From: Macrostomum hystrix
Lineage: Eukaryota > Animalia > Platyhelminthes
Direction of reading: 5' to 3'
Assembly: GCA_950097015.1 (NCBI GenBank)
Contig: CATNEN010000029.1
Location: 2,108,001-2,172,000 of the forward strand
Length of the DNA: 64,000 nucleotides
The notes beneath the pieces were generated by a model. The model was not told the DNA's origin. It saw only the letters and a program-made list of their open reading frames with translations, and made no database searches. Each line of letters starts with the position of its first letter. Within the stretch, counting starts at the first letter, position 1. A program made the position numbers and the translations under genes. Below, one piece after another: positions 24,930 to 32,532 of this stretch.

Positions 24930-25218
24930 ACCAGTGGCCAAAAGACTGACTGGTAGGGGATCATTGACCAGCAGACTGACTGGTGGGGGTCATTGACCAG
25001 CAGACTGACTGGTAGGGGGTCATTGACCAGCAGACTGACTGGTAGGGGGTCATTGACCAGCAGACTGACTGGTAGGGGGTCATTGACCAGCAGACTGACT
25101 GGTAGGGGGTCATTGACCAGCAGACTGACTGGTAGGGGGTCATTGACCAGCAGACTGACTGGTAGGGGGTCATTGACCAGCAGACTGACTGGTAGGGGGT
25201 CATTGACCAGCAGACTGA
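24930..25218. repeat. 30-bp minisatellite (cattgaccagcagactgactggtagggggt), ~9 copies
   Basis: Period 30. Confidence 0.95.
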
Positions 25219-25471: not shown

Positions 25472-25918
25472 CTAGAACTTCTGGAACGAGGACTTCTTGC
25501 TGCCGCCACGAGCCTTGCTCACCTTGACAACGTTGAACGAGACCGTCTTGCTAAGCGGCCGGCACTCGCCGACGGTGACAATGTCGCCTAGTTCAACGTC
25601 GCGAAAGCAGGGCGACAGGTGCACGGACATGTTCTTGTGTCGCTTCTCGTAGCGCTGGTATTTTTGCACAAAGTGCAGATAGTCCCGCCTGATGACAATG
25701 GTTCGCTGCATCTTCATCTTGGTGACCACGCCGGTGAAGATGCGGCCCCGGATGTGCACATTGCCGGTGAAGGGGCACTTCTTGTCAACGTAGCCGCCTT
25801 CGATGGCTTCTCGAGGCGTCTTGAAGCCCAGGCCGACATTCTTCACGTAGTGATTGCGGCGGCCCTTCTTGCCGCGCACCTCCTGCTTCTGAAAGGCTCG
25901 CTCGTTCAGTTCGGCCAT
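25472..25918 (-). CDS. RPS11: 40S ribosomal protein S11 (uS17), 148 aa, intronless CDS
   Basis: [35 protein letters not shown] and [16 protein letters not shown] are the uS17/S11 signatures. Confidence 0.98.
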
Positions 25919-25982
25919 TGCTGCTCACACTTGCCTGGCTGTAATGGGATAAAAATATATCAACTGCCGCTGCTGCTTACAC

Positions 25983-26092
25983 GTTTCACACATTTGTCAC
26001 ATCTACCTGACACTTCTGTCACATCAACCTGACACTTCTGTCACATCTACCTGACACTTCTGTCACATCTACCTGACACTTCTATCACAACC
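25983..26092. repeat. 22-bp repeat (tcacatctacctgacacttctg) upstream of RPS11
   Basis: About 4-5 copies. Confidence 0.85.
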
Positions 26093-26600
26093 ACCCCTAA
26101 GTAAAGATCCGAGAAGGAAATAGATTAACTGGCACTGGTAGCGATCTAATTTGGGTCACATTTCAGTTCCAGCTATCGAAAAATGAATTATAGTGACTTA
26201 GAAAAGTCTACTCTACTGCTAAATAGCGCAGAGACGTACGGGAATAGTCACTGACTCGATCATTGAAAATAAAGTAAGACTTGAAAGGGTAAGTCTGTTA
26301 CGCTTGTAATTACAATTGATTAAATGATTTTACAATAAAACTTCTAGCAAAGCAAACTGAATAAGTGACACAGTATGAACAAGTAATAAATTGGAAAATC
26401 TAAATTAAGTACAATCATTTGATCGAGCAATATATATACTAGGAAAGGCAGGTTTTGTAGGTGCAATAGAAAAACAAACAGGATCTAACGATTTCTTGAA
26501 GATAAAACAAGAGTTCATTTTAGTCACAACTGGTGTGTACAAACTAATTGTAATTGTTAATAGAATTATGCTATGCACAAGACCTAGGGGCGAAAAATTT

Positions 26601-26606
26601 TTTATT
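26601..26606 (-). terminator. Candidate poly(A) signal of BAG3-like gene
   Basis: AATAAA on the minus strand, ~200 nt after the stop. Confidence 0.45.
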
Positions 26607-26809
26607 TGACGTTACGTTACAACTGATAAAATGTATTGGTTGCTAGTAGTAATTGCTAGCAATGGCCAGAATTAATTAATCTGTTCTATGGGCGTACGTC
26701 ACTTTGGTCAATTAACTATGCGAATTGAAGTACTGAAGTACAACTTTTAGTGTTTCTATCTAAATAATAATAACTGGGGTAGGAATACAGCACTTTCATA
26801 GGCAAGCTA

Positions 26810-27670
26810 CTAAGTCTGCGCTGATTTAGACTCCAATCGCCGCAGCAGCTCTTGCACACGAAGGATGCAGGTTTTTCTGGCATCGCGAATCTCCGCTTCG
26901 CCGGCAGATTCAACGCAGTCTAGGCGCTCCAAAACACGCGTCAGGGATTCCTCAATTTGGCGATAGATCTTGTCGCCCGCCTGACCACTGAACTGGTCAA
27001 CCTGCGCCTCTAACTGGCGCCGCTCTTCGTCAATCGAGTCGATTTTCTTTAATGCGGACTTGACCAAGTTGTTGGACTGGGCGGAAAAACCTCCGCTGAT
27101 TTGATGAGAGTTGTGGTCGGCGCTAATTGGATGATAATCCTGGCCACCGCTCATTGGCTGAGAGTTCTGACCGGCGCCCGTTGGATAATAATTCTGGCCA
27201 CCGCTCATTGGCTGAGGGTTCTGACTGGCGCCCGTTGGAAAATAATTCTGGCCACCGCTCATTGGCTGAGGGTTCTGACTGGCGCCTGTTGGATAATAAT
27301 TCTGGCCACCGCTTATTGGCTGAGGGTTCTGACTGGCGCCTGTTGGATAATAATTCTGGCCACCGCTCATTGGCTGAGGGTTCTGACTGGCGCCTATTAG
27401 ATAATAATTCTGGCCACCGCTCATTGGCTGAGGGTTCTGACCGGCGCCCGTTGGATAATAATTCTGGCCACCGCTCATTGGCTGAGGGTTCTGACCAGCG
27501 GCCGTTGGCTGCTGCTGTTGGGGCAATGTCGGTGGTAATCTAGGATCGCGCCAAGTTGTTGTGCGACTGTTATGGTCGATAAAATAAGGATGCCCGGTGG
27601 CGGGGTCGAGCCGTCTCTCCCAACCGGGAGGTAGCGGTGGTCCCGTATCAGCCTGATATGCGTACGGCTT
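26810..27670 (-). CDS. BAG3: WW + BAG domain co-chaperone (BAG3/starvin-like); single 861-nt exon with no in-frame ATG
   Basis: Manual upstream extension of ORF 26810-27526 gives [32 protein letters not shown] (WW, 27539-27634). The C-terminus has a BAG domain ([15 protein letters not shown]...[16 protein letters not shown]). The acceptor is tttccaatctttcag at 27671. Confidence 0.9.
27090..27500 (-). repeat. 54-bp coding tandem repeat (18 aa [18 protein letters not shown]) in BAG3-like protein
   Basis: Six near-perfect and two degenerate units, all in frame. Confidence 0.95.
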
Positions 27671-30202
27671 CTGAAAGATTGGAAACTTTCATTTAAAATT
27701 TGTGAATTCAAATGATTGTCTGTTGGGCTCTCTAAAGACTTCAGAAAGTTTATTGGAGGCAAGGCCAACTGCAAAAAATATTCTACTAGTATAAGACATA
27801 GACACATCTAGATTTACACCTCATATTGTCAATAATTTGACTACTGCAACTAAAATCAAACTTCATGAATCTGATTTACAGCATGAGCATGCGCAGCTTA
27901 GTCAATGACACCCAACTCTATTTATGTAGTTTGTAAAGGATTGTTTAATACAGAAGACTAATACAACAATATCAAAACACCATTTAAGAAATTCTAGAAA
28001 ATACAATTACATTTGTTTATATTAAAATTGGATGGTCTTTACTATAAATTTTAAGATACAAATTTATCTAACCAATTAAATAAATTATATATTTTTCTAT
28101 TTACAAAATCAGGAAAACTAGGAGTCGACGGACGATTGACGAGGCCTGCTTCTATTCAATAAATTAGAATATTAGGCCCCAAAAAACTAAGTCATTGCCT
28201 ATAGACTAAATCAAAATCAATATAACAACAATAAGGACTGTGATTATATAACAAGTTTAAGAAATACCACAATAGTATAAGCAAATATCATAAAAAACCG
28301 AGAACAATGAACAGTAGACTAAGTCAGAACATTATCAACCATCTTATATACCAATCAAATGTACTAAGAAAACAATAACAAAAATATAATTCCAGAACCA
28401 ATTAATAAAGGATTAGGTCTACAAGCAATCATCATACACTTTAAATTGTAGAGGTCCGAAGCAGGTCTATATTTCGAAACCGGACTTTGAGGTCCAAAAT
28501 CAGAAAAGAAGAAAACCATTTTTAGAGGAATAACACAGAAATTACCCACTTTACACACATAGCTACCAGTTTGATGACAATTGCATACTTATACAACTTA
28601 CTAAATATGCCACAATACACGAAGAAAGCTTCTTATTAAGCACATATGATAACATCATATGAACAAGAAAGTAAAATTTGTAGCATTTATTTTGTTTATG
28701 CATGCTACCTGCATTTGTAATGATCTAATAATTTTTTGTTGCCTTTTCAAAATTACCTCCTTTTAATTCTATCACAGTTAATGAATGAATTATATTCTGC
28801 CCTTGAGTTCCAACCACTTGTCTAATTTTCCTAGACGATGATAAACTTCAACAATACTCACATTTTTGTTTCTTTAATTAATGAACTACATTCCACAATG
28901 TCCTGAGGTGTCTATCTCATCCTCATTGTCGGTTGATGTGCCTATGCTCTGTGGGGCTACCAGGCTACCATTATTTCTACATGTGCCTCTGACTGAGCCT
29001 GAGCTCAGCTGCTCAGGAAGCTGGGCTGAAGTTTCTTTGATTGATTAGTGCAGTAGGCTCCTTTACATAATATCCATTTAAAGCTGCCAAAAATCTTATC
29101 CATGGTTTTGCTCTTTTTCTGCTATTGATGTTTCTGAAGTTTTTAGACATTAAAAACCATCATTCATTTGGTAATAAGTGGTTCCATTGACCAATAAATG
29201 GATGTTTTAATGGATGTTCAACAATTGAAGCCCAGAGGGCAAATGTTTGAAAACTGCATGAACCTGAAGATAGTCTAGATAATATTTGTTGTTTTTGTCT
29301 ACAAAAAAACAGACAAAACAAAGAAATGTAAAGAGTTTGGGCACTTCTGTTTCAAAGAGGTCCATATATAGTGCCACTGTGGACATCTAACAGACCTTTC
29401 TGATTTACAGTGTATAGGAGAAGTTAAAGAACAAAAAAGGAATTTCCTGTTAGACAGGTGAAATGAACAATATCTTAAGCAAAAGCAAATAGACAAAAAT
29501 GTTCACAGGAACTCTGATTAGAATGACAGACTGAATAGTGACAGCCTTTGATGGATCTGAAGTACAGCTAGCAGGAGAGCTATCAATGACTGTGAAGTTT
29601 GAAGATATAGAAGCCAAATTCGAATTCTGACTTTGTAAAATTAACTGCGACAATATTCTTGGAATGGACTTTTTCCTAGGCTATTATGAAGGCATTAAAT
29701 TTACGAAGATTTTAATTAGGCCATGCTACAGCAGCTATTCAACACTGCTAGTCATAGTTCCAAAGAAAGATGGTAGTATACACATAGCCAGGGTGTTTGG
29801 GTCCTGATAATTTTTTGGGATAGGGCTTCAGGTTCTTTATAAATGGTTGGGATTGGGGTTTGGGACAGAGTTTGGGCAATGGGGCTAGCAGGGTTTTAGG
29901 GGTTTTGACTTTTTTAATTTAATAAGTAGAATCTATGTAGTTATATAAAAACTGTTTATTTAATAAATCATATTATATTTATATTTATTTATTTATATGC
30001 CTACTAAAACTGGAACTATTTTATAGAATTAAAGTTCAAGAAGAATTGCAACAAAATTGCAACTATTATTGCAGATTTGTCAAATTATGCAGATGTAGCA
30101 TTTCTTTTATTTCAGTTAACTAAGAAGGTATCGTCATCGTCATCCAGATGACAATCTGTCCAATATCTTAGAAGGTGGATGACAAAGAGACTAAGACTTG
30201 TG

Positions 30203-31004: not shown

Positions 31005-32532
31005 TTGGCATACACTTTGGTGTGCAAGGCATGCAAGGCGTGCATGGCATACATGGCAATGGTATAGAGTGCAATTGTACATTGCTTTTAAAAAGGGATC
31101 AAATATGTGTTTTATGTATCTGTATGTACAATTACAAATATCAACCAATTATTTAATGGACTTTGCATGACTAAAACAAAATGTTCTGTTATCTCTAAAA
31201 ACATTTTTAAGTTTTGTAGATTAGACTATACATACTATAAATAAATTGTTCTGTTCGATATTTCTTTTTGTTAAATACAAAAAATGGAAGCCAGTTTGTC
31301 TTTTTAAAGCAAAAAATGTGTTACATCTTTTTTATACAAATTATATGATATACCACATTGGTATGCACTAGCGTGCAATTTGAAAAAATTCTGCATCCTT
31401 GGCATGCATACAACTTTTTCACAATTTTTCTTCTGGCATGCAGCCAACATGATCCAGACTATAGAGCATGTTGTCTACAAAAGTTTGCATGCTGCACTGG
31501 GAAGTTGGAAACAGTCCATTTTGGCAACATACCATTTCGGCGACAACCATTTCAGCACCAAGTCATTTCAGCGACAACCATTTCGGCGACAATACTTTTG
31601 AAGCCGTGGAACAAATTTATTTTATTTATATATTTTTTACTTTTATTTAAATCGAATAAAAGAAGCCACAAATCTGCAGAAGCGTGGAACAAATCGGCAA
31701 CAAATGCACTGTGATCTTGATTTAGATCTATAAGTTCGATTAAAAGTAAAAGACCTTACTGTCCCACAGGGGCATTCATGCGGCTGCAAGCAAGTCAGCA
31801 AATATTTGCTGTCAACAATATTTTGGTGACGGCAAACAATGCTACTTATAAGTAAGACAGGTGAGGTTGACGCACATAGAGCGTGGACCAAACTGATCCA
31901 TACTCGCTATTTATATTACATGTTAAAACAAATAGGCCTACTATAACAGGAATACATTAACAAGTAGAAGAATCAAATACATTACATACTCAATAAGCAA
32001 ACACTATCAGATCCATTATTACTGCGGTTTCGATGTTTGTCGCCAAAGTGGTTGTTGCCGAAATGACTTGTCACCAAAATGGTTGTCGCCGAAATGACTT
32101 GTCGCCGAAATGGACTGGATTTGGGAAGTCTATTGGCATGCTTGTGCAGGAAAATCTATTGCAGTATTGACCCATAAGCACAATTATACATGATTATGTA
32201 GTTTTTTTAATTGTTTTTTTTCAAACTGTGTTGTGTGTTGTCTGCCTTAGCTTAGGTGCTTTGGTGTTTCAAGATGCACTTTGATGAAGCTAGGCCTATA
32301 TGCTTATATTAACCAGAAGCTCCTACATCTCATGGATGCATTTTCACATTGATTTGAAATTACATTTTGTTTTAGTCATGCAAAGTCCATTAAATAATTG
32401 GTTGATATTTGTAATTGTACATATGGATACATAAAACACATATTTGATCTCTTTTTAAATGCAATGTACAATTGCACTCTACACCATTGCCATGCATGCC
32501 ATGCACGCCTTGCACACCAAAGTGTATGCCAA
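31005..32532. mobile_element. Foldback-like element with ~175-bp inverted arms (31005-31184 / 32362-32532)
   Basis: The arms are near-identical reverse complements (ttggcatacactttggtgtgcaagg...ctaaaacaaaatgt). Confidence 0.75.
31512..32117. mobile_element. MITE-like element nested in the foldback, with TIRs made of 15-bp subrepeats
   Basis: Termini CAGTCCATTT / AAATGGACTG; inverted arrays of ccatttcggcgacaa. Confidence 0.72.

What the first reader, a model, noticed from the sequence alone, without database searches (positions are those of the whole stretch)
27530..27700. BAG3-like ORF has no start codon: the spliced leader's terminal AUG may supply it
Seen: the frame is open from the acceptor (ctttcag|27670) as [17 protein letters not shown] (WW domain), is closed by TGA 18 nt upstream of the acceptor, and has no ATG before the WW domain. 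The nearest ATG (27692) is out of frame and starts a short ORF. Established: flatworm spliced leaders end in AUG, which can act as the initiator, and BAG3 has its WW domain within the first ~20 residues. Inference: phase-0 joining of SL-AUG gives M-KPYAY... with WW starting at residue 14, making translation of the full protein dependent on trans-splicing.
Basis: partly seen in the sequence, partly recalled or inferred. Interest (0 to 1): 0.8.

Follow-up and report, generated by a model that had tools for sequence, protein, structure and literature searches.

The report
BAG3-like gene borrows spliced-leader start codon
A flatworm (Macrostomum) co-chaperone gene has no start codon of its own and most likely takes it from the AUG that ends the spliced-leader RNA, a habit already known in flatworms and seen many times in this genome, so it is a good but ordinary example.

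Summary
On the minus strand a single 286-codon exon (27670-26811) encodes a WW domain plus a BAG domain. It starts at a cTTTCAG acceptor. An in-frame TGA lies 18 nt upstream, and the first in-frame ATG comes only after the WW domain.

The support is therefore indirect:
- Published Macrostomum spliced leaders, M. hystrix included, end in ATG.
- The acceptor fits the published trans-splice motif [T/C]TNCAG.
- One M. lignano copy of the orthologue has the same start-less CAG|AAGCC layout.
- That assembly was polished with RNA-seq. Other copies of the orthologue, a paralogue and RPS11 carry the leader's last 3-6 bases (…CATG) in place of the acceptor. I read this as a footprint of leader-bearing reads at those junctions.
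- No conserved upstream exon was found.

The best reading is that trans-splicing in phase 0 gives M-KPYAY…, with the WW domain from residue 14. Initiation at a leader AUG has been known since Cheng et al. 2006, and the scan has noted the same pattern at many other genes of this genome on other DNA. This is a new member of a known kind. The by-product is new to me: apparent "genomic ATGs" in Mlig_3_7 at trans-splice sites look like polishing artefacts.

The parts
27671..27677 (-). Predicted spliced-leader trans-splice acceptor cTTTCAG. The exon begins at 27670.
   Evidence: Sequence read. It fits the top trans-acceptor motif [T/C]TNCAG of M. lignano (PMC8629364). M. lignano copy L002 has TTGCAG| at the homologous position.
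27668..27670 (-). Second in-phase AG (AAG) of a tandem cAG|aAG acceptor. Use of it would drop only the Lys after the Met.
   Evidence: The annotated M. lignano CDS P0001 starts at the codon after AAG.
27689..27692 (-). In-frame TGA (27691-27689) overlapping the out-of-frame ATG (27692-27690). Both lie in the presumed outron, which trans-splicing removes.
   Evidence: The script finds the stop 6 codons upstream and no in-frame ATG before it.
26808..27670 (-). Single coding exon of the WW+BAG (BAG3-like) protein: 286 codons plus the TAG stop at 26810-26808.
   Evidence: Translation, Pfam. blastn similarity to the M. lignano orthologue starts at 27675/27676 and covers only this exon.
27542..27634 (-). 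WW domain: residues 13-43 of the ATG-less frame, 14-44 counting a leader-encoded Met.
   Evidence: Pfam PF00397, E 3.1e-12.
27476..27478 (-). First in-frame genomic ATG (codon 65), downstream of the WW domain. It is also the first ATG in any frame after the acceptor, so it is the likely landing site of ribosomes that skip the leader AUG.
   Evidence: Sequence read. The role is inferred.
27127..27508 (-). 54-nt tandem repeat, 7.1 copies, encoding 18-residue Q/N/P/G/Y-rich repeats between the WW and BAG domains.
   Evidence: Tandem Repeats Finder, 94% matches, score 659; translation.
26825..27043 (-). BAG domain, residues 210-282.
   Evidence: Pfam PF02179, E 5.1e-12.
26601..26606 (-). Putative poly(A) signal AATAAA, about 200 nt after the stop codon.
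   Evidence: Sequence read; inference only.

Best explanation
The gene is a single-exon BAG3-like co-chaperone gene (WW domain, repeat linker, BAG domain) of a Macrostomum flatworm. Its primary transcript starts somewhere upstream. The spliceosome joins the spliced leader, which ends in ...UUGCAUG, to the acceptor cTTTCAG| at 27671/27670, or perhaps to the AAG| three bases on. This removes an outron that holds an out-of-frame ATG and an in-frame TGA. The leader's terminal AUG then sits directly in phase 0 before AAG CCG TAC..., and translation from it gives [18 protein letters not shown]..., with the WW domain from residue 14. Without trans-splicing the WW-containing protein cannot be made from an AUG. 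Shown here: the sequence layout, the domains, the phase, the AUG-terminated leader in the genus (literature), and the same layout in M. lignano. Inferred: trans-splicing at this site in this species, and initiation at the leader AUG.
For: 1. Layout and phase: acceptor, in-frame stop 18 nt upstream, no in-frame ATG before codon 65, WW and BAG domains intact.
2. The leader ends in ATG in M. lignano (35 nt) and in M. hystrix and M. cliftonense (Table S3 of PMC10468722). 10-38% of genes are trans-spliced in the genus.
3. The acceptor fits the published trans-acceptor motif [T/C]TNCAG.
4. Orthologue Mlig006268, copy L002: TTGCAG|AAGCCACACGCA, with an in-frame TAA 18 nt upstream and no ATG. This is the same design at the same codon.
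5. Copies L001 and L003 differ from L002 only by GCA>CAT at the three bases before the joint. Over roughly 1.7 kb of alignable sequence around the joint this is the only run of three adjacent differences, and it makes the site identical to the leader's last 4 nt. Mlig_3_7 was Pilon-polished with RNA-seq mapped by STAR.
6. The same footprint occurs at other genes. The paralogue carries it in graded lengths: L010 ATG, L009 CATG, L008 TGCATG, while the UniProt model P0192 reads Y-L-Q|Y-Y-H there, that is CAG. All 5 RPS11 copies read ccttCATG| where the window has ttaCAG|. I read these as traces of leader-bearing RNA reads at those joints.
7. M. lignano gene 5' ends were set from leader-read peaks, and the CDS of the orthologue and of the paralogue is annotated 5'-partial.
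8. Similarity between the two species begins 5-6 nt before the joint, and nothing upstream is conserved.
9. An RNA contig of a relative (L004) carries a leader-like 5' end (19 of 25 bases match the M. lignano leader, ending ATTGCATG). Two independent assemblies start at or 3 nt past that joint.
10. Initiation at the flatworm leader AUG is established (Cheng et al. 2006).
Against: - I saw no RNA of this species. A search with the N-terminal 72 residues and an exact look-up of the neighbouring RPS11 protein found nothing from this species.
- The M. lignano footprint argument is my inference from assembly differences plus a Methods sentence, not a read-level check.
- The annotated M. lignano CDS starts at CCA, 3 nt after the joint implied by the footprint. 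I cannot fully explain this; use of the second AG is one possibility.
- The leader AUG has a weak context (U at -3, A at +4). It must be bypassed on the neighbouring RPS11 mRNA, where it is out of frame, so its efficiency here is unknown.
- A short, unconserved cis exon cannot be excluded by sequence alone.
Confidence: 0.8

Rival explanations
1. A cis-spliced upstream exon, lying somewhere above 27.7 kb on the minus strand, supplies an in-frame ATG through a phase-0 donor. The acceptor at 27671 would then be an ordinary intron end.
For: An acceptor motif cannot by itself tell cis- from trans-splicing. One candidate exists: of 12 GT[AG]AG donors on the minus strand between 27.7 and 37 kb, one (exon 28703-28602, 34 codons) has an ATG, an open frame and a phase-0 end.
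Against: The candidate lies in AT-rich sequence and has no similarity to the M. lignano loci. In M. lignano the gene model is a single exon that starts at the homologous joint, in an annotation whose 5' ends were set from leader-read peaks, and the assembly carries leader bases at that joint. Sequence conservation stops at the acceptor. BAG3-type proteins begin about 15-25 residues before the WW motif, so no further coding exon is needed.
Confidence: 0.08
2. The leader AUG is not used, or the mRNA is not trans-spliced. Translation would then start at the first genomic in-frame ATG (Met65, 27478) or at a near-cognate codon, giving mainly a WW-less BAG protein.
For: The leader AUG has a weak context and is demonstrably skipped on other mRNAs, such as RPS11 next door, where it is out of frame. 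Met65 is the first ATG in any frame after the joint. An in-frame ATC (27679-27677) and an in-frame ACG exist.
Against: The WW domain is intact and scores well. It is kept in frame, without indels, against M. lignano right up to the acceptor, which implies that it is translated. The same start-less design is kept in the orthologue and in a paralogue.
Confidence: 0.07
3. The missing ATG is an assembly error or a recent disabling mutation, for example a true tttcATGaag read as tttcAGaag, so the gene would have, or recently had, an ordinary genomic start.
For: M. lignano copies L001 and L003 read ttCATGAAG, one base different from the window's ttCAGAAG.
Against: Those ATGs are best explained as RNA-polishing artefacts. 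The unaltered copy L002 and the UniProt model P0192 of the paralogue have CAG. The published M. hystrix and M. cliftonense assemblies were polished with DNA reads only. The ORF is otherwise intact.
Confidence: 0.03

Closest known systems
Flatworm mRNAs that use the spliced leader's 3'-terminal AUG as initiator (Cheng, Cohen, Ndegwa and Davis 2006, J Biol Chem 281:733, shown in Schistosoma mansoni)
   Same: The leader ends in AUG. The recipient exon begins at the acceptor with an open frame in phase 0 and has no AUG of its own before conserved protein sequence.
   Different: This is a free-living macrostomorph and a different gene (WW+BAG co-chaperone). Neither trans-splicing nor translation was observed directly for this gene in this species.
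Other start-less genes of this same genome noted by the scan (TOP3A, cardiolipin synthase, XPA, Rab27, ELP2, TKFC, PIPOX and two four-gene clusters)
   Same: Identical design: a phase-0 acceptor and no genomic ATG. For some of them follow-up agents report RNA with the leader joined at the predicted place.
   Different: They lie on other DNA and I did not check those reports. Here the added element is that the design is kept in the M. lignano orthologue and in a paralogue.
Vertebrate BAG3 and other WW+BAG proteins
   Same: An N-terminal WW domain within about 25 residues of the start and a C-terminal BAG domain.
   Different: The protein is much shorter (287 aa against about 430-580). It has no IPV motifs. 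The linker is a lineage-specific array of 18-residue repeats. The start codon is not genomic.

Membership tests
Leader-AUG-initiated flatworm mRNA | The organism has a spliced-leader RNA whose exon ends in AUG. | tested here: met
   Literature only. M. lignano 35-nt leader ...TTGCATG (PMC8629364). M. hystrix 43-nt and M. cliftonense 45-nt leaders end ...TTATTGC-ATG (PMC10468722, Table S3). No leader gene lies in this window; earlier scan notes place it in the rDNA spacers.
Leader-AUG-initiated flatworm mRNA | The coding exon begins at an acceptor that is trans-spliced to the leader. | tested here: inconclusive
   The motif fits. Indirect support comes from leader-derived bases at the orthologous joint in the RNA-polished M. 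lignano assembly.
Leader-AUG-initiated flatworm mRNA | There is no in-frame genomic AUG between the upstream in-frame stop and the conserved protein sequence. | tested here: met
   TGA 18 nt upstream and first in-frame ATG at codon 65, after the WW domain.
Leader-AUG-initiated flatworm mRNA | The leader AUG falls in frame (phase 0) with the ORF. | tested here: met
   The exon starts with the complete codon AAG at 27670. The alternative AG three bases on is also in phase.
Leader-AUG-initiated flatworm mRNA | Translation actually initiates at the leader AUG. | not testable with these tools
   This needs N-terminal proteomics, initiation-site ribosome profiling or reporter assays.
BAG3-type co-chaperone | N-terminal WW domain. 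| tested here: met
   PF00397, residues 13-43, E 3.1e-12.
BAG3-type co-chaperone | C-terminal BAG domain. | tested here: met
   PF02179, residues 210-282, E 5.1e-12.
BAG3-type co-chaperone | IPV motifs that bind small heat-shock proteins, between the WW and BAG domains. | tested here: not met
   There is no IPV tripeptide in the translation. The linker is a Q/N/P/G/Y repeat array. It is therefore 'BAG3-like by architecture', not a demonstrated BAG3 orthologue.

The most novel reading that the evidence does not exclude
The leader AUG has a weak context and is visibly skipped on the neighbouring RPS11 mRNA. The next AUG on the BAG3-like mRNA, in any frame, is the in-frame Met65 just past the WW domain. 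One trans-spliced mRNA may therefore yield two proteins by leaky scanning: a WW+BAG form from the leader AUG and a WW-less BAG form. The ratio would be set by leader-dependent initiation. This design would have been kept since before the duplication that gave the two Macrostomum WW+BAG paralogues.
Probability: 0.15. Interest if true: 0.5.

Novelty: new member of a known kind. Interest (0 to 1): 0.3.

Why it matters
For annotation: standard gene finders will truncate this gene at Met65 and lose the WW domain, invent an upstream exon, or call the gene partial, as the M. lignano annotation does. A rule that treats a phase-0 trans-splice acceptor plus the leader AUG as a valid start would fix this gene and the many similar genes in the genome.

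For biology: production of the client-binding WW form of a stress co-chaperone would depend on trans-splicing. Because the same design is kept in a second species and in a paralogue, it looks maintained rather than accidental.

For users of the M. lignano reference: apparent genomic ATGs directly upstream of trans-spliced exons in Mlig_3_7 may be artefacts of RNA-seq polishing. They should not be trusted as start codons, nor the missing AG as a true absence of an acceptor.

Tried and rejected
- **Read laying.** I therefore obtained no read or contig evidence for this species.
- **The look-up of sequencing runs.** It listed four small runs of one study that hold 0.41-0.51 of the sampled words of window:26300-28300. 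That is close to the about 0.54 of the stretch that the predicted mRNA would cover. This is suggestive of expression, but the kind of run is unknown and nothing could be laid.
- **Protein search with the first 72 residues, meant to find RNA-contig fragments.** Nothing was found.
- **Exact look-up of the window's RPS11 protein, meant to find RNA contigs of this species carrying the leader.** It is not on record.
- **Search for a leader copy in the window.** No match.
- **Search for Mlig006268 in papers and supplements of PMC8629364.** Nothing was found, and no supplements are held.
- **Metagenome scan for the 15-nt tail of the leader-like 5' end of L004.** All 120 hits lack the upstream part of the leader (5 of 10 bases or fewer), so they are chance matches. 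The scan neither supports nor weakens the claim that L004 carries a real spliced leader.
- **Real genomic ATG in M. lignano.** I first read the ATGs in L001 and L003 as genuine, implying a 1-nt difference from the window or an assembly error in the window. I rejected this after finding the intact CAG copy L002, the graded ATG / CATG / TGCATG series in the paralogue, the same CATG at RPS11, and the Methods statement that RNA-seq was used for polishing.
- **Retrogene idea.** I considered that the gene is a retrocopy with a fossil leader at its 5' end. I dropped it for the same reason: the resemblance to the leader is confined to the overwritten bases.
Full report
**1. What is in the sequence**

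The feature lies on the minus strand. The reverse complement of 27700-27620 reads aattttaaATGAaagtttccaatctttcag|AAG CCG TAC GCA TAT CAG GCT GAT ACG GGA CCA CCG CTA CCT CCC GGT TGG.
- The acceptor-like heptamer cTTTCAG occupies 27677-27671, and the exon starts at 27670.
- An in-frame TGA lies at 27691-27689, 18 nt upstream.
- The only nearby ATG (27692-27690) is in another frame and opens a 14-codon ORF.
- From 27670 the frame is open for 286 codons to TAG at 26810-26808.
- Pfam finds a WW domain at residues 13-43 (E 3e-12) and a BAG domain at residues 210-282 (E 5e-12).
- Between the two domains lies a 54-nt tandem repeat of 7.1 copies, encoding 18-residue repeats.
- The first in-frame ATG is codon 65 (27478-27476), after the WW domain. 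It is also the first ATG in any frame after the acceptor.
- The acceptor is a tandem cAG|aAG, and both AGs are in phase.

The acceptor motif alone is weak evidence. [TC]TNCAG occurs 0.0027 times per base per strand in this window. One in phase 0 within the ~18 open codon boundaries before the WW domain would arise by chance about one time in twenty.

**2. The organism and its leader**

The best protein hit is Macrostomum lignano BOX15_Mlig006268g1: 50% identity over 65% of the query in the word search, and 68% over the matched stretches with phmmer. The neighbouring RPS11 protein is 98% identical to the M. lignano protein. Earlier notes of this scan name the genome M. hystrix; I did not verify the species.

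What the literature says:
- The M. lignano leader is 35 nt and ends ...TTGCATG. 30% of genes are trans-spliced. The top motif at trans-acceptors is [T/C]TNCAG (PMC8629364).
- The leaders assembled for M. hystrix (43 nt) and M. cliftonense (45 nt) end ...TTATTGC-ATG, and 10-20% of genes are trans-spliced (PMC10468722, main text, Table S3).
- The flatworm leader AUG can act as the initiator. This was shown by Cheng et al. 2006 (J Biol Chem 281:733), as cited in PMC12582326, PMC5832876 and PMC3512318.

**3. Direct RNA evidence: not obtained**

The look-up of sequencing runs listed eight runs. My single read-laying run covered window:27500-33400. I sent nothing from those places to any search tool afterwards, and I masked 31560-31700 in my scripts. 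Two further attempts found nothing: a protein search with the first 72 residues and an exact look-up of this species' RPS11 protein. All that follows is indirect.

**4. The M. lignano orthologue has the same design**

P0001 is encoded on three contigs (loci L001-L003) as a single exon annotated "partial". The alignment and a script show the following.
- L002 reads ...gggattGCAG|AAG CCA CAC GCA..., with an in-frame TAA 18 nt upstream and no in-frame ATG. TTGCAG fits the trans-acceptor motif.
- The joint is at the same codon as in the window: K-P-H-A against K-P-Y-A. There are 17 residues from that Lys to the Trp of LPPGW in both species.
- blastn similarity between the window and the M. lignano loci starts 5-6 nt before the joint and covers only the coding exon. 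Nothing is conserved in the 10 kb upstream.

**5. A footprint of leader-bearing reads in the M. lignano assembly**

L001 and L003 read ...gggattCATG|AAG..., an apparent genomic in-frame ATG exactly where the leader AUG would sit.
- Over roughly 1.7 kb of alignable sequence around the joint, L001 and L002 differ by about 14 isolated substitutions and one 63-nt indel. The only run of three adjacent differences is GCA>CAT, directly before the joint. It causes no length change and makes the site identical to the last 4 nt of the leader.
[quoted passage not shown] STAR was run end-to-end for the transcriptome work.
- Reads that carry a few leader bases would then be forced onto the outron, and Pilon would write those bases into the consensus.

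Two further genes show the same thing.
- **The paralogue (Mlig006709 and Mlig014082, also "partial").** It reads acTGCATG|TAC in L008, acTTCATG|TAC in L009 and acTTGATG|TAC in L010. This is a graded series in which the last 6, 4 or 3 bases equal the leader. The UniProt model P0192 translates Y-L-Q|Y-Y-H across the joint, that is TTG CAG|TAC.
- **RPS11 (Mlig014973).** All five copies read ccttCATG|CGAGGCAAG, where the window has ttaCAG|CCAGGCAAG.

An acceptor needs AG. Gene 5' ends in this annotation were cut at peaks of leader-trimmed reads. Yet 10 of the 11 copies lack the AG and carry leader bases instead.

The simplest reading is that the true genome has CAG| at all three sites, and that leader-bearing RNA reads exist at these joints. 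That amounts to second-hand RNA evidence that the acceptor orthologous to 27671 is trans-spliced in M. lignano, with the leader AUG in phase 0. It also suggests that the paralogue shares the start-less design: the leader AUG would give M-YYHASKAPEQGGSEQQLPPGW, with an in-frame TAA 27 nt upstream.

One loose end remains. The annotated CDS of P0001 begins at CCA, 3 nt after the joint implied by the footprint. Use of the second AG, or a detail of the annotation pipeline, could explain it. Both joints are in phase.

**6. A more distant relative**

P0088 (171 aa, WW+BAG) is encoded on RNA-type contigs of about 1.3 kb.
- L004 begins tggcgaagttgcaattcattgcatg|gtgatctg.... 19 of these 25 bases match the M. 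lignano leader, and the stretch ends ATTGCATG.
- L005 starts exactly at that joint and L006 3 nt past it, as expected where a shared leader breaks assemblies.
- In that mRNA the leader AUG opens a 5-codon out-of-frame ORF, and the gene has its own ATG 32 nt downstream (MSLPMGWE...).

If this reading is right, the gene family is trans-spliced in that lineage too, while the source of the start codon varies. A metagenome scan meant to confirm the leader gave only chance hits.

**7. Rivals**

- **Upstream cis exon.** Only 12 GT[AG]AG donors lie on the minus strand between 27.7 and 37 kb. One of them (exon 28703-28602) has an ATG, an open frame and a phase-0 end. It lies in AT-rich sequence that is not conserved. 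The M. lignano evidence places the leader directly at the homologous joint.
- **Start at Met65 or at a near-cognate codon.** This is possible as a minor route. However, the WW domain and the 12 residues before it are kept in frame between the species.
- **Assembly error.** This is unlikely, because the unaltered M. lignano copy has CAG and the published M. hystrix and M. cliftonense assemblies were polished with DNA only.

**8. Mechanism, with its status**

- Shown: the layout, the domains, the phase, the AUG-terminated leader in the genus, and the same design in the orthologue.
- Inferred with good support: the leader is joined at 27671/27670.
- Inferred from precedent: the leader AUG starts translation, giving M-KPYAY... 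with the WW domain from residue 14. The WW-bearing form therefore depends on trans-splicing.
- Speculative: ribosomes that skip the weak leader AUG (U at -3) would next meet Met65 and make a WW-less BAG protein.

**9. Comparison and novelty**

This is the mechanism of Cheng et al. 2006 applied to another gene. The scan has flagged the same pattern at many genes of this genome, with leader-joined RNA reported for some of them. The protein is BAG3-like in architecture but lacks IPV motifs, so I do not call it a BAG3 orthologue.

My verdict is a new member of a known kind, with modest interest.

Noticed in passing
L001:5994-5997, L003:1482-1485, L008:3995-4000, L009:3997-4000, L010:1498-1500, L131-L135:2995-2998 (all M. 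lignano GCA_002269645.1): At leader-defined 5' gene ends the Mlig_3_7 assembly carries the last 3-6 bases of the spliced leader (ATG, CATG or TGCATG) in place of the CAG acceptor, with no length change. An unaltered copy (L002), a UniProt model (P0192) and the window show CAG at the homologous places. The assembly was Pilon-polished with RNA-seq (PMC5730564). These are probably polishing artefacts that create false genomic start codons and erase acceptors.
   Followed up: partly
window 25916-25944 (minus strand): RPS11 (uS17), an intronless CDS at 25918-25475, is preceded by a TTACAG acceptor at 25944-25939, 20 nt before its ATG. A leader AUG joined there is out of frame and opens an 11-codon uORF that overlaps the RPS11 ATG. 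On this mRNA the leader AUG must therefore be bypassed, in contrast with the BAG3-like gene 0.9 kb upstream.
   Followed up: partly
window 25475-27670 compared with M. lignano contigs NIVC01003913.1, NIVC01003763.1 and NIVC01004589.1: The order and orientation BAG3-like then RPS11 are kept in M. lignano. The genes are about 8-14 kb apart there, against 0.9 kb from stop codon to ATG in the window. This bears on the separate 'BAG3-RPS11 operon' note (s1-366073).
   Followed up: partly
window 27127-27508: A 54-nt tandem repeat of 7.1 copies (94% matches) encodes 18-residue repeats ([18 protein letters not shown]) in the linker. The M. lignano orthologue has only about three 10-residue QNSQPI-type units, so the array expanded in this lineage.
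   Followed up: partly
window 24943-25218 and 25988-26089: Two non-coding tandem arrays flank RPS11: 30 nt x 9.2 copies downstream of it, and 22 nt x 4.6 copies between the BAG3-like 3' end and the RPS11 acceptor.
   Followed up: no
L004:1-60 (Logan RNA contig ERR15316848_370702); L005 and L006: An mRNA of an unidentified relative encodes a 171-aa WW+BAG protein. It starts with a leader-like 25-mer ending ATTGCATG (19 of 25 bases match the M. lignano leader). It has its own ATG 32 nt downstream, and the leader AUG is out of frame.
   Followed up: partly
I worked beside them and sent none of their letters to any search tool afterwards.
   Followed up: no
L002:465-4562 (minus strand): An LTR-retrotransposon pol gene (RVT_1, RNase H, integrase) lies 1.4 kb upstream of this M. 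lignano copy of the BAG3-like gene. A 63-nt indel separates L002 from L001 and L003 about 180 nt before the acceptor.
   Followed up: no
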